Virus record (IMG/VR): IMGVR_UViG_3300035156_000206
Span: 124,001-188,000 of that record
Direction: 5' to 3' (one strand)
Length of the DNA: 64,000 bases
Each line of letters begins with the position of its first letter. Within the stretch, counting starts at the first letter, position 1. Under the pieces are notes generated by a model. The model did no database searches, was not told where the DNA came from, and worked only from the letters and a program-made list of their open reading frames with translations. This document shows, piece after piece, positions 3,507 to 32,424 of this stretch. Position numbers and translations under genes: made by a program.

Positions 3507-3535
3507 AAAAAAGGACGCCTAGGCGTCCTTTTTTT
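3507..3535. terminator. Bidirectional terminator-like palindrome
   Basis: aaaaaaggacgcctaggcgtcctttttt between convergent genes. Confidence 0.75.
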
Positions 3536-18154: not shown

Positions 18155-18538
18155 TTATAATTGGGCATCGAATTCGAGGTGTAGGTCAAAGCGATCGACC
18201 ACATTCAACTCGATATACTGCAGAACGGCCGATGCAATGATACCGTTCAATTCGGGTACAGCAAACACATTCAGCTCGATCAGGGTAACACGTGGGTCAT
18301 AGTTGAAGACGTACTCCAACTGTTGACGCACTTCCTGGACGGTCTTTTCGTCTAGCTGCTCGAATAATAGATCTGGGATAGAAGTACCAAAGTTTGACAT
18401 CATCACGCGTTCACCACGTCTGGTATAGATGTGGTTCAGCAAGTCGCGTTTCACAACATCAATGTCAGCAAGTCTGAACGATTGTTTGTTGGAAAGGTAA
18501 CTGGCAGTTGAAAACCCACGGTATAAAGATAAAGCCAT
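18155..18538 (-). CDS. Baseplate wedge subunit gp25-like
   Basis: Motifs TRRGERVMMSNFGT, LLFE, YDPRV. Confidence 0.9.
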   Translation of the reverse strand: MALSLYRGFSTASYLSNKQSFRLADIDVVKRDLLNHIYTRRGERVMMSNFGTSIPDLLFEQLDEKTVQEVRQQLEYVFNYDPRVTLIELNVFAVPELNGIIASAVLQYIELNVVDRFDLHLEFDAQL

Positions 18539-18580
18539 TACTTACTCCTTGTAATGGCTTTATTTATCCTCATTGGCAGA

Positions 18581-30445: not shown

Positions 30446-30931
30446 ATGATTATCTTAGGCATCGATCAATCTTACACCAGCTCAGGTTTAGTTGTTGTGG
30501 ACGGCGATAAATTGTTGTACAGTGGCGTCTTTAAGACGCCCAAGGACATGGACATCTTCGAACGCGCTTGGCGCATCGGTGAACATGTACTAGAAAAGAT
30601 AGAAGAATTCGGTGTCGAGGCGGTTGCGATTGAAGGTCTTGCTTTTGGTATGACTGGAAACGCTACGCGAGACCTAGCAGGACTACAGTTTGTGATTGTA
30701 TCGAAGATCCAGTTTGTTGCTGGAAAGCTCGTTGCTGTCATATCACCAAAGTCTCTGAAAGTGTTCGCGACGGCTAATGGTAAGGCAACGAAGAAAGAGA
30801 TGATTGCTGCAGTACCCGAGGATGTAAATTCTATTTTCAAGGGTCAGGGGTATAAACTAACGACAGGTCTTGCTGACTTATCGGATGCTTATTTCCTGGC
30901 GCAATATATCAAGAAGCAGGATACAAATTAA
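30446..30931 (+). CDS. ruvC: RuvC-like Holliday junction resolvase
   Basis: ILGIDQS, AIEG, NGKATK, DLSDAY catalytic motifs; AGGAG RBS; late promoter. Confidence 0.88.
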   Translation: MIILGIDQSYTSSGLVVVDGDKLLYSGVFKTPKDMDIFERAWRIGEHVLEKIEEFGVEAVAIEGLAFGMTGNATRDLAGLQFVIVSKIQFVAGKLVAVISPKSLKVFATANGKATKKEMIAAVPEDVNSIFKGQGYKLTTGLADLSDAYFLAQYIKKQDTN

Positions 30932-30940
30932 GTTGCGAGA

Positions 30941-31192
30941 TGTTGACCCGTGTAGTGCGGGTGAAAACCTTCGGGTATGACATTGTGGACGCAATACGAA
31001 TGATGGATGTGCGCAACATCCGGTACTAGCTCGTATTGTGGGTCCCACTAAATTGGTTATGCAACCGCGAGCGTAGGGATACAAGCAGCGCGAGACCATA
31101 TCCATCTAGCCACTCCTGCGAGTGATAGTTAAACATCTCCTGACCATTGGGGTATGACAGTATGCCTGTCCGGCCCGCACCCACGGTCGATA
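30941..31192 (+). ncRNA. Putative structured non-coding RNA of unknown class
   Basis: Long-range stem 30941-30962/31173-31192; ACC-UUCG-GGU tetraloop; nested stems GCAATACGA/TCGTATTGT, GGATGT/ACATCC, CACTC/GAGTG, GACAG/CTGTC; several G-U pairs; no credible ORF. Confidence 0.55.
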
Positions 31193-31243
31193 GGGGGATT
31201 GTTTCATTGTTTGAATTAATTGATAGTCGGCAATCAAGATAGA

Positions 31244-31434
31244 TTAACTGATCGAATATCTGAGGACGAACGCAGTGAGGACGAAGATGGAGATCAGATG
31301 AGGCGAAGCCGAGTTAAATGATTCAACCGGTTCTTTTGCAGCTAGCTGGATTATGTGTCTGTCGTTACACTCCAGACTTAATATAGATGATTGTGAAACT
31401 CGCTACGCTCGCCATCACAATCATCTATATTAAG
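31244..31434. repeat. ssDNA-type hairpin cluster with a 20-bp perfect inverted repeat (31377-31396/31415-31434)
   Basis: GNA-triloop hairpins closed by tandem GA/GA pairs on both strands; arms CTTAATATAGATGATTGTGA / TCACAATCATCTATATTAAG. Confidence 0.75.
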
Positions 31435-31436
31435 GG

Positions 31437-31631
31437 TTATTTTAATCGGCCGTGTTCTGTGAGTACTTTGGATTCAGCAATATCGTACTCTATTCGAGCC
31501 TTTTCCGATTCAGCTGATGCAACTGCCAACTGAGCTTCCGCTTTCGCCAATGTATCTTCCACAGATGGTTCAGATTGGCTTCCACCACAAGCAACCAAAC
31601 ACAATAGTACTAGAACTGGTAGCGTCTTCAT
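31437..31631 (-). CDS. Small putative lipoprotein
   Basis: MKTLPVLVLLCLVA-CGG lipobox; ATGA overlap with the upstream gene. Confidence 0.65.
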   Translation of the reverse strand: MKTLPVLVLLCLVACGGSQSEPSVEDTLAKAEAQLAVASAESEKARIEYDIAESKVLTEHGRLK

Positions 31632-32350
31632 TGTACTGACTCCAACGATAAGTGTTTGTCCTCAACCGTCTTGGCATAGTCATACAACTTCTCAATATAC
31701 TTGTCACGACGCAGAATTTTGAATGCCAGGTTCTCAACCGAGAACTCACCGTCACGATCCAAGCCCATCTTCCTCATCTCTCGCAATCGGGTTTTTAATT
31801 TCTCGATCGTAGTGAGATTACACACTTTATTATGGATTATCCCGTCGATAGACGATTTCCATTTATCTGCCTTACTGATTACATACGAGTCGTTAATTTC
31901 GGGATTGGATTTCTTAGGCTTGACCAACCACTTGTTCCTCATAATGCTATACACACCTGACGATACATGAGGTTCCTTCTCACCTTGGACATACAACTCA
32001 ACGGGGAAGCCTTTGATCTTGATATCATGCTCAAGGTTCCATAGCTGCTTCTTAGCGTTGAATAGCTCCAAAGCTACCTCTTCATTCTCACAGCGTGACA
32101 AGTCTGCCATGATGTGAAGATCGACGTCTGACTGATCGTGCCACGTATAGTTGGCGAGACTCCCAGTTACAATCATATCAACCACAATTAGTTCACTTGA
32201 GTCCACAAAGTCGATGAACTGTTTTGCAATCGACTTCAGTGCAGTCTTAATCTCGGGCTTCATGACGGTCTCTTCCCATACAGCATGGTTGAGGTGACGC
32301 TTCTCATCAAGAGCGAACGCTGTTTCATTCAGGTATTGTTTAAATTTCAT
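31628..32350 (-). CDS. Pol-beta superfamily nucleotidyltransferase
   Basis: TGSLANY...SDVDLH (GS..DxD), VELYVQ; late promoter; MKFKQYLNE N-terminus. Confidence 0.75.
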   Translation of the reverse strand: MKFKQYLNETAFALDEKRHLNHAVWEETVMKPEIKTALKSIAKQFIDFVDSSELIVVDMIVTGSLANYTWHDQSDVDLHIMADLSRCENEEVALELFNAKKQLWNLEHDIKIKGFPVELYVQGEKEPHVSSGVYSIMRNKWLVKPKKSNPEINDSYVISKADKWKSSIDGIIHNKVCNLTTIEKLKTRLREMRKMGLDRDGEFSVENLAFKILRRDKYIEKLYDYAKTVEDKHLSLESVQ

Positions 32351-32394
32351 TTGGATTATCCTTGTGTGCATCCTATTTATGGTACAGACAAAAG

Positions 32395-32424
32395 AAAAGG
32401 AAGGTTGTTTCCAACCTTCCTTTT
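32395..32424. terminator. Terminator hairpin
   Basis: aaaaggaaggttg-tttc-caaccttcctttt. Confidence 0.7.

What the first reader, a model, noticed from the sequence alone, without database searches (positions are those of the whole stretch)
31244..31434. Hairpins built from tandem sheared G-A pairs and GNA triloops on opposite strands
Seen: the apparent direct repeat TGAGGACGAA x2 is one top-strand hairpin, TATC-T-GA-G-GA-C-GA-AC-[GCA]-GT-GA-G-GA-C-GA-A-GATG. It has three tandem GA/GA mismatches alternating with Watson-Crick pairs and is extended by CTGATC/GATCAG. Next comes GA-GGC-[GAA]-GCC-GA. The loop of the 20-bp perfect inverted repeat reads C-GA-GC-[GTA]-GC-GA-G on the bottom strand. Established: GNA triloops (d(GCGAAGC)) and tandem sheared GA pairs are unusually stable in ssDNA and occur in phage ssDNA signals such as G4-type origins and N4 vRNAP promoters. 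Inference: these are strand-specific ssDNA protein-binding signals, one set per strand, which fits a bidirectional origin. Standard folding programs would miss them.
Basis: partly seen in the sequence, partly recalled or inferred. Interest (0 to 1): 0.8.

Follow-up and report, generated by a model that had tools for sequence, protein, structure and literature searches.

The report
Conserved GA-hairpin element beside RuvC
The odd hairpins are real and conserved: they end a 500-base gene-free element that occurs once per genome, right after the RuvC gene of a group of uncultured T4-like giant phages, and that looks like a structured RNA followed by strand-specific, DNA-type hairpins, possibly a replication start site.

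Summary
All the described features are at the stated coordinates. A fourth hairpin (H3, 31357-31377, bottom strand) was missed. Relatives show many compensatory changes in the pairings, while the tandem G-A pairs and the G-N-A loops stay fixed.

The hairpins are the 3' third of a single-copy, about 505-nt gene-free element (30932-31436). It follows the RuvC-like gene in every syntenic relative found. The element has three parts:
- a 5' domain of about 270 nt that folds on the + strand like an RNA;
- an AT-rich linker;
- two homologous hairpin units in inverted orientation, H1+H2 on the + strand and H4+H3 on the - strand.

More distant relatives carry only the + strand unit. The unit stems are almost purely Watson-Crick, and the loops match the GCGNAGC DNA mini-hairpin signature. 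No Rfam family, reverse transcriptase or Prim-Pol primase was found, and H4 is not a canonical terminator.

My best reading, at modest confidence, is a transcription-coupled (R-loop type) replication initiation site whose displaced strands fold into these hairpins. RNA-only readings remain serious rivals. No transcript or replication data exist, because the phage is uncultured.

The parts
30446..30931 (+). RuvC-like Holliday junction resolvase gene (context). The element starts directly after its stop codon.
   Evidence: Pfam RuvC E 2e-6 and PHROG 159 E 7e-32. The same gene precedes the element in all relatives.
30932..31198 (+). 5' domain: highly conserved, multi-helix, RNA-like fold on the + strand, including a C(TTCG)G loop at 30966-30973.
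   Evidence: It is more conserved than the flanking genes. RNAalifold gives 82 pairs, 8 of them with double changes and 18 cells with one-sided changes through G-U. Consensus energy is -74.3 on the top strand against -54.6 on the bottom, and 41 of 328 cells are G-U. No Rfam hit.
31199..31247 (.). AT-rich linker (GC about 0.28). Its sequence varies but its composition is kept in close relatives.
   Evidence: The lowest 40-nt GC of the element lies here. The last 45 nt before the unit have GC 0.20-0.38 in the seven near and middle genomes scored, and 0.33 or below in 4 of the 12 distant ones. This is the indel-rich block.
31248..31297 (+). H1: long hairpin. Outer stem CTGATC/GATCAG, inner stem TATCT/AGATG, three tandem GA/GA steps, apex AC-GCA-GT.
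   Evidence: The outer stem becomes GAAACC/GGTTTC in L037. The single G-C between GA steps becomes A-T in L032 and L034. The middle GA/GA step is Watson-Crick in L038.
31298..31314 (+). H2: short hairpin AT-GA-GGC-GAA-GCC-GA-GT, containing GCGAAGC.
   Evidence: GGC/GCC becomes AGC/GCT in L032 and L039, and AT/AT becomes AC/GT in L038. GA/GA is unchanged in all 7.
31315..31356 (.). Spacer between the two units. Holds the 10-bp palindrome CAGCTAGCTG (31339-31348).
   Evidence: 34-55 nt, AT 0.59-0.74 in seven genomes.
31357..31377 (-). H3: short hairpin. On the bottom strand it reads GTCTG-GA-GT-GTA-AC-GA-CAGAC.
   Evidence: The outer stems covary (TGGTG/CACCA in L031, GTGGATG/CATCCAC in L032). 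It is fully Watson-Crick in L034. It forms part of the bottom-strand model hit at 31348-31437.
31377..31434 (-). H4: perfect 20-bp stem. Its 18-nt loop forms C-GA-GC-GTA-GC-GA-G on the bottom strand.
   Evidence: Relatives have unrelated stems of 11-22 bp, nearly all perfect, with the same apex motif. R2 hit on the - strand, E 5.8e-8.
31437..31631 (-). 64-aa ORF with a lipoprotein-type signal (context). Its stop codon abuts H4.
   Evidence: the translation contains LVAC-GG after a hydrophobic stretch. No Pfam or PHROG hit.

Best explanation
What is there (shown): a single-copy cis element of about 505 nt that follows the RuvC gene. It consists of a + strand RNA-like domain, an AT-rich linker, and two homologous hairpin units in inverted orientation. 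Each unit is a long hairpin capped by GA-(2 bp)-GNA-(2 bp)-GA, followed by a short GA-flanked GCGNAGC-type mini-hairpin.

How it probably works (inferred): it is a transcription-coupled initiation site for DNA replication.
1. Rightward transcription out of the RuvC operon makes the structured RNA.
2. That RNA stays hybridised to its template around the AT-rich linker, forming an R-loop as at T4 oriF/oriG or ColE1.
3. The displaced + strand folds into H1 and H2.
4. These compact G-A/GNA-capped DNA hairpins resist single-strand binding protein and re-annealing. They hold the bubble open and offer a branched DNA for loading the phage helicase and primase.
5. In this clade the inverted unit H4+H3 does the same on the - strand for the opposite fork. 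This resembles ssiA and ssiB of RSF1010.
For: - One locus per genome. The R2 model finds only 31244-31324 (+) and 31348-31437 (-) in 292 kb; the next best hit has E 2.5.
- The element is kept in every syntenic relative, and is better conserved than the flanking proteins.
- The 5' domain folds on the + strand with RNA-type features: 12.5% G-U cells, one-sided changes, and a C(UUCG)G loop.
- The units behave differently. There are 164 double changes against 10 one-sided ones. Fifteen independent long stems of unrelated sequence are nearly all perfect and Watson-Crick. 48 of 54 loops are GNA and 4 are GNNA, and the closing C-G is present in 21 of 21. This is the GCGNAGC/GCGNNAGC DNA mini-hairpin signature, whose RNA versions are far less stable (PMC13037366).
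- The - strand unit is a true inverted homologue of the + strand unit.
- The - strand unit stays with the element even where unrelated + strand ORFs were inserted between it and the - strand genes, in L037 and L039.
- An AT-rich linker lies just before the + unit.
- Precedents exist: T4 R-loop origins near strand-switch regions (PMC3016281), and two inverted ssi hairpins in RSF1010 oriV (PMC8567376).
Against: - There are no replication or transcript data. No RNA run holding the sequence was listed.
- There is no GC-skew turn at the locus.
- The flanking genes converge, whereas T4 origins sit at divergent switches.
- Known R-loop origins do not need a 270-nt highly conserved RNA fold. That feature fits a stand-alone RNA better.
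- Distant relatives carry only the + strand unit.
- No Prim-Pol or Toprim_2 domain was found, although the record is only 84% complete.
- The G-U contrast compares alignments of different depth and construction.
- Hairpins on the RNA-sense strand are predicted equally well by RNA models.
Confidence: 0.35

Rival explanations
1. One long + strand non-coding RNA of about 400-505 nt whose 3' domain is H1/H2. H4 acts as its 3' terminal or processing hairpin. The bottom-strand look of H3 and H4 is a relic of an inverted duplication. The RNA works as an RNA-protein complex or regulator of unknown role.
For: - The 5' domain has strong RNA signatures and is continuous with the units on the same strand in all clades.
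- Distant relatives have only + strand units.
- A T-rich tract follows H4 in the close relatives.
Against: - GA/GA and GNA are conserved in H3 and H4 on the bottom strand across at least 9 genomes whose stems have turned over completely. On the + RNA these positions would be tandem U-C mismatches and UNC loops.
- G-U pairs are nearly absent from 15 long stems.
- The loops are GNA rather than GNRA or UNCG.
- H4 is unlike the phage's own terminators, which are GC-rich stems with A and T tracts.
Confidence: 0.2
2. Two convergent transcripts each end in a homologous RNA hairpin unit: the RuvC-operon RNA in H1/H2, and the - strand mRNA in H4/H3. The units bind one protein or protect the 3' ends.
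For: - Each unit reads GA/GNA on the RNA-sense strand of the transcription unit that runs into it.
- The - strand gene's stop codon abuts H4 in the window, L032, L034, L038, L133, L134 and L135.
- The - unit co-occurs with the - strand nucleotidyltransferase gene. It is present in all near and middle genomes long enough to show it, and absent in the distant clade.
Against: - In L037 and L039, + strand ORFs lie between H4 and the - strand genes, yet the unit is kept.
- The stems and loops carry DNA-type signatures.
- No other gene of the genome carries such a 3' module.
- The nucleotidyltransferase occurs without any unit in other clades, such as L042 and L078.
Confidence: 0.15
3. A DNA-level hairpin or cruciform that serves as a programmed target for the neighbouring recombination nucleases (the SbcCD-like gp47/gp46 pair and RuvC). 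It would create a break or junction that seeds recombination-dependent replication or concatemer processing.
For: - It is the longest perfect palindrome in the genome.
- It lies directly after the SbcD-SbcC-RuvC gene block.
- The stems are kept perfect with no intermediates, which suggests the hairpin forms in DNA.
Against: - It does not explain the conserved 5' RNA-like domain or the strand-specific GA/GNA caps.
- Stems of 11-22 bp with 15-18-nt loops extrude poorly.
- Nothing was tested.
Confidence: 0.1
4. Chance similarity, or a decayed acidic coding repeat (GAG GAC GAA = Glu-Asp-Glu; the 33-aa ORF at 31220-31321).
For: - The pattern TGAGGACGAA-N5-TGAGGACGAA occurs in 23 unrelated viral contigs.
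- A 33-aa ORF covers H1.
Against: - Those 23 contigs give no hit to the unit model.
- Relatives carry 1-nt indels inside H1 that break the frame.
- Substitutions are compensatory, not synonymous.
Confidence: 0.01

Closest known systems
RSF1010 (IncQ) oriV single-strand initiation signals ssiA and ssiB
   Same: Two hairpin-forming signals lie close together on opposite strands in inverted orientation. Each is capped by a GNA-type mini-hairpin (CCGAAGG in ssiA). They lie next to an AT-rich stretch (PMC8567376, PMC13037366).
   Different: In RSF1010 they are recognised by the plasmid primase RepB' (Prim-Pol type) and sit beside iterons. Here no Prim-Pol domain was found, there are no iterons in the window, the host genome is a 292-kb T4-like phage, and a large RNA-like domain lies upstream.
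DNA mini-hairpins GCGNAGC / GCGNNAGC, as in the phage G4, St-1 and alpha3 complementary-strand origins
   Same: The same heptamer with a free N and a sheared G-A closure occurs here: GCGAAGC in H2, GCGTAGC in the H4 apex, and GCGCAGC, GCGTAGC or GCGAAGC after the long stem in distant relatives.
   Different: Those origins lie in single-stranded DNA phages and are read by the host primase. Here the genome is double-stranded, so strand exposure must come from transcription, unwinding or replication.
R-loop origins: T4 oriF/oriG and ColE1 RNA II with downstream primosome assembly hairpins
   Same: A transcript is proposed to prime or open the origin, and hairpins lie on the displaced, RNA-sense strand. 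T4 origins also lie at transcription strand switches (PMC3016281). The ColE1 comparison rests on my own knowledge, not on a paper read here.
   Different: T4 origins share no sequence motif or conserved RNA fold and sit at divergent switches. Here the switch is convergent and the RNA domain is strongly conserved.
Phage N4 virion RNA polymerase hairpin promoters
   Same: A 5-7 bp DNA hairpin with a GGA or GAA triloop built on GCGGAGC-type sequence (PMC13037366).
   Different: N4 has several such promoters near one genome end and a giant T7-like polymerase in the virion. Here there is one locus only and no T7-like polymerase hit, although that search was inconclusive because its control did not ring. 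The 2588-aa ORF matches a virion structural family. A promoter on the + strand would transcribe antisense to the + strand fold.
Large structured phage-associated non-coding RNAs (GOLLD, ROOL and similar)
   Same: The 5' domain is a long, multi-helix non-coding region that is more conserved than the neighbouring proteins.
   Different: No Rfam family matches in the window or in 11 relatives. None of those RNAs is known to end in inverted GA/GNA hairpin units.

Membership tests
DNA mini-hairpin motif (GCGNAGC / GCGNNAGC) | Heptamer or octamer G-C-G-N(N)-A-G-C with any N | tested here: met
   48 of 54 loops are GNA and 4 are GNNA across 20 genomes (my count). The closing C-G is present in 21 of 21.
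DNA mini-hairpin motif (GCGNAGC / GCGNNAGC) | Exceptional thermal and nuclease stability as DNA, much lower as RNA | not testable with these tools
   ViennaRNA DNA parameters leave the GA rod open. Oligo melting or NMR is needed.
Single-strand initiation signals (RSF1010 ssiA/ssiB type) | Two hairpin signals on opposite strands in inverted orientation | tested here: met
   The + strand unit model hits the - strand neighbour in six genomes, with E down to 2.8e-11. This is not met in the distant clade, which has one unit only.
Single-strand initiation signals (RSF1010 ssiA/ssiB type) | Cognate primase of Prim-Pol type, and iterons beside the signals | tested here: not met
   PF09250 and PF13155 give no hit in the 84%-complete genome. 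There are no iterons in 30932-31436.
Single-strand initiation signals (RSF1010 ssiA/ssiB type) | Priming of DNA synthesis on the single-stranded template | not testable with these tools
   Needs a biochemical priming assay.
Replication origin (general) | Turn of cumulative GC skew, or divergent gene orientation, at the site | tested here: not met
   The skew follows gene strand. Its global minimum is at 22 kb and its maximum at 238 kb, not at 155 kb. The genes converge at the site. This is a weak test for T4-like phages.
Intrinsic (bidirectional) terminator | GC-rich stem, loop of 3-8 nt, U tract (A and T tracts on both sides if bidirectional) | tested here: not met
   The scan calls no terminator at H4. 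H4 has an AT-rich stem, an 18-nt loop and no T tract on the - side. The genome's other long hairpins are canonical terminators.
Phage N4-type hairpin promoter | Several copies, plus a T7-like virion RNA polymerase | tested here: inconclusive
   There is a single locus. PF00940 gives no hit, but the control did not ring. The 2588-aa ORF matches a virion structural protein family.
Retron (msr-msd with reverse transcriptase) | Reverse transcriptase gene next to the structured RNA | tested here: not met
   PF00078 gives no hit in the genome. The neighbours are RuvC and a nucleotidyltransferase.
Any Rfam 15 RNA family | Covariance-model score at or near the gathering threshold | tested here: not met
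   No hit at gathering score. Only chance-level hits at E above 1 in the window and 11 relatives. No tRNA or tmRNA.
Protein-coding sequence (33-aa ORF 31220-31321) | Reading frame kept in relatives | tested here: not met
   1-nt indels inside H1 in L032, L034 and L038. Changes are compensatory.

The most novel reading that the evidence does not exclude
This is a previously undescribed kind of phage replication origin. A conserved structured RNA is coupled to hyperstable G-A/GNA-capped DNA hairpins that form on the strands it displaces. One unit would give unidirectional initiation and two inverted units bidirectional initiation. That would bring the priming logic of single-stranded DNA phages and IncQ plasmids into T4-like giant phages.
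Probability: 0.3. Interest if true: 0.85.

Novelty: new variant of a known kind. Interest (0 to 1): 0.68.

Why it matters
Origins and large non-coding RNAs of giant T4-like phages are almost unknown, because most of these phages are uncultured.

This element is sharply defined, occurs once per genome, and is better conserved than the proteins around it. It joins two things normally seen apart: an RNA-type fold, and the GCGNAGC / tandem G-A hairpins known from single-stranded DNA origins.

If it is an origin, it gives a sequence-level handle for finding replication start sites in metagenomic phage genomes. It would also be a natural case where DNA mini-hairpins act inside a double-stranded genome.

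If it is purely RNA, it is a new large structured RNA family with an unusual G-A-rich terminal module.

Either way it can be tested with simple oligo, probing and mapping experiments.

Tried and rejected
- Known RNA families: Rfam at gathering and permissive thresholds on the window and 11 relatives gave nothing. No tRNA or tmRNA.
- Cultured relatives: nucleotide search of cultured phages gave no match. Their RuvC proteins are below 37% identical.
- Exact-pattern scans of viral contigs: the inverted-repeat arms and a conserved 19-mer gave nothing. The 23 hits to the TGAGGACGAA pair have no unit.
- Transcript evidence: no RNA run was listed. Laying the three DNA runs showed only the source contig and fragments of relatives, with no joints.
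- GC skew: no turn at the locus.
- Enzyme searches in the genome: no hit for reverse transcriptase, Prim-Pol or Toprim_2. The T7-like polymerase search was inconclusive.
- Solved structures for the neighbouring nucleotidyltransferase: none.
- Long-range pairing of H1/H2 with the complementary H3/H4 loops: rejected. The window and L031 keep the local hairpins but not the complementarity (GA-AC-GCA-GT-GA against GA-GT-GTA-AC-GA).
- Hammerhead core and kink-turn readings of H1: rejected by eye. There is no three-way junction, no A14 equivalent and no 3-nt bulge.
- Canonical terminator: rejected.
- Coding: rejected.
- RNAalifold on the distant-clade 5' region failed because the alignment is too divergent. 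Homology of the 5' domains between clades rests only on shared blocks seen by eye.

Full report
**Setting**

The window is bases 124001-188000 of a 292-kb viral record, 84% complete. Its genes are T4-like:
- SbcD- and SbcC-like gp47/gp46, a RuvC-like resolvase and a baseplate hub;
- portal, major head protein, tail sheath and terminase.

The finding lies in a gene-free gap at 30932-31436. The gap sits between the RuvC-like gene (30446-30931, +) and a 64-aa lipoprotein-like ORF (31437-31631, -), so the flanking genes converge.

**The observation**

- TGAGGACGAA occurs only at 31261 and 31276 in the whole genome.
- The 20-bp inverted repeat is the genome's longest perfect one with a loop up to 40 nt.

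I name the hairpins as follows:
- H1, 31248-31297, + strand;
- H2, 31298-31314, + strand;
- H4, 31377-31434, with its apex on the bottom strand.

**Relatives**

Cultured phages have nothing close. Proteins 57-80% identical to the RuvC gene led to metagenomic contigs with the same gene order. All of them keep a gap of more than 500 nt after RuvC.

The gap is better conserved than the genes around it. A wider metagenome scan gave 80 loci with RuvC at 55% identity or less.

**The hairpins are real**

On seven genomes the H1+H2 pairing has 11 pairs with changes on both sides. Shuffles give 4.7 +/- 1.5 (0 of 500 reach the observed value), and slid controls give 1-3.
- The outer stem CTGATC/GATCAG becomes GAAACC/GGTTTC in L037.
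- The lone G-C between two GA steps becomes A-T in L032 and L034.
- The middle GA/GA step becomes Watson-Crick in L038.
- GGC/GCC of H2 becomes AGC/GCT.

The GA/GA steps next to the stems never change. With 21 units, 25 of 28 pairs show double changes, and the covariation score is 0.63 against 0.17 in shuffles.

A 1-nt indel inside H1 in several relatives rules out coding.

**One set per strand**

A covariance model built only from the + strand H1+H2 hits the - strand of the neighbouring H4+H3 over its full length in six genomes (alignments). The refined model gives E values from 2.8e-11 to 1.5e-5 for five of them and 5.8e-8 in the window.

So H4+H3 is an inverted, diverged copy of H1+H2. Each unit is a long hairpin with the apex GA-(2 bp)-GNA-(2 bp)-GA, followed by a short GA-flanked mini-hairpin. 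The arrangement was confirmed by model in L133 and L134 and by eye in L135.

Local hairpins are conserved, but long-range complementarity between the units is not.

**Distribution**

- In the whole genome the unit model finds only these two copies; the next best hit has E 2.5.
- The simple motif is at chance level genome-wide, but 3 of its 5 hits fall in 31267-31411.
- Downstream of RuvC in about 80 loci the motif occurs 29 times on the top strand and 17 times on the bottom strand in 52.8 kb. In a control region upstream it occurs 2 and 6 times in 51.4 kb.
- Thirteen more distant genomes carry one unit, always on the RuvC strand, 200-430 nt after RuvC (854 nt in L107). In most it is followed directly by the 3' end of a small - strand gene and then the baseplate hub gene.
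- The single + strand unit is therefore the widespread form. The inverted second unit marks the clade that also has a nucleotidyltransferase gene inserted before the hub gene.

**The upstream domain**

Positions 30932-31198 fold on the + strand.
- RNAalifold gives 82 pairs, 8 with double changes, and 18 cells changed on one side through G-U.
- Consensus energy is -74.3 on the top strand against -54.6 on the bottom, and 41 of 328 cells are G-U.
- The domain contains a C(UUCG)G loop.
- Distant clades have their own conserved blocks and covarying stems in the same place.
- No Rfam family matches anywhere.
- An AT-rich linker (GC 0.20-0.38) precedes the + unit in the close clades and in some distant ones.

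**RNA or DNA for the units?**

Three features set the units apart from the 5' domain.

1. *Stem evolution.* Fifteen independent long stems of 11-22 bp share no sequence. Nearly all are perfect, and they are essentially all Watson-Crick. In the units, double changes outnumber one-sided changes 164 to 10. In the 5' domain the numbers are 10 and 18. This points to a constraint that does not tolerate G-T, or to DNA-level homogenisation of the two arms.
2. *Loops.* 48 of 54 loops are GNA, 4 are GNNA, and the closing pair is C-G in 21 of 21. This is the GCGNAGC/GCGNNAGC DNA mini-hairpin, known from the G4 origin, RSF1010 ssiA and N4 promoters. Its RNA form is much less stable (PMC13037366).
3. *Bottom-strand conservation.* H3 and H4 keep GA and GNA on the bottom strand in at least nine genomes. 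They do so even in L037 and L039, where unrelated + strand ORFs separate H4 from the - strand genes.

Caveats: the alignments compared differ in depth and in how they were made. Also, hairpins on the RNA-sense strand are predicted by RNA models too.

**H4 is not a terminator**

The phage's own terminators are GC-rich stems flanked by A and T tracts; at least ten appear among the longest inverted repeats, and one lies at 32395-32424. H4 and its relatives lack these features.

**Interpretation**

I commit, at 0.35, to a transcription-coupled initiation site.
- The structured + RNA forms an R-loop around the AT-rich linker.
- The displaced + strand folds into H1 and H2.
- These hairpins hold the bubble open and offer a branched DNA for helicase and primase loading.
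- The inverted unit serves the other strand.

Shown: the anatomy, the conservation, the strand specificity, the single copy, and the DNA-type signatures.

Inferred: R-loop formation, strand displacement, protein loading, and any replication role.

Against the model:
- no skew turn at the locus;
- convergent genes, whereas T4 origins sit at divergent switches;
- no Prim-Pol or Toprim_2 hit;
- one unit only in distant clades;
- a 5' fold far more elaborate than known primer RNAs.

The rivals are a single long non-coding RNA (0.20), two convergent RNAs with homologous 3' modules (0.15), a nuclease target for recombination-dependent replication (0.10), and chance or decayed coding (0.01).

**Novelty**

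Each ingredient is known. New are the combination, the host (double-stranded T4-like giant phages), the fixed position after RuvC and the inverted duplication. No database family covers any of it. I rate it a new variant of a known kind, with interest 0.68.

Noticed in passing
window 31628-32371 (-); L032, L034, L037, L039, L133-L135: A 237-270-aa Pol-beta-type nucleotidyltransferase (PF01909, PHROG 36119 of unknown function) lies between the element and the baseplate hub gene. This holds in every genome that has the inverted bottom-strand unit and whose contig reaches that far. It is absent in the distant clade with one unit, and present without any unit in L042 and L078.
   Followed up: partly
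L030:1-3267: In one close relative the SbcC-like gene product is 1201 aa instead of about 836 aa and carries LAGLIDADG/Hom_end hits. This suggests an intein or homing-endonuclease insertion.
   Followed up: no
L077:2975-3090; L104:2960-3100: In distant relatives the end of RuvC and the start of the gap hold about eight spaced copies of YAGAC(A), which look like iterons. Part of this stretch is coding (the RuvC C-terminal tail).
   Followed up: no
L070, L071, L083, L087, L104 and others, about 60-100 nt after RuvC: A conserved block TGAAACAAACAG..AAATAGAAACGCC opens the distant-clade non-coding region. AAATAGAAAC could be a promoter-like element. It is followed by a covarying hairpin with the conserved loop ATACCCT(A)ACT.
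   Followed up: no
window 31339-31348: A perfect 10-bp palindrome, CAGCTAGCTG, lies in the spacer between the two units. L032 keeps it intact and L034 has CAGCAAGCTG (one change in the central dinucleotide); it is absent in L031.
   Followed up: no
window 31437-31631 (-): A 64-aa ORF with a lipoprotein-type signal (MKTLPVLVLLCLVAC-GG). At this position relatives have unrelated ORFs of 172-185 aa, so the site next to H4 is a hot spot for gene replacement.
   Followed up: partly
genome-wide, e.g. window 32395-32424, 3507-3534, 18529-18563: The phage's other long perfect inverted repeats are classic bidirectional terminators: A tract, GC-rich stem, 3-8-nt loop, T tract.
   Followed up: partly
L134:2650-2700: In this relative the H4-type stem is AGAAAAAGCG/CGCTTTTTCT, which resembles a bidirectional terminator, yet it still carries the bottom-strand GA-GC-GGA-GC-GA apex.
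   Followed up: no
L007-L029: The pattern TGAGGACGAA-N5-TGAGGACGAA occurs in 23 unrelated viral contigs, sometimes as 3 copies at a 15-nt period. These are probably acidic peptide repeats. None matches the unit model.
   Followed up: partly
L082:2990-3062: A tRNA gene (58.6 bits) lies about 1.8 kb downstream of the element in one distant relative.
   Followed up: no
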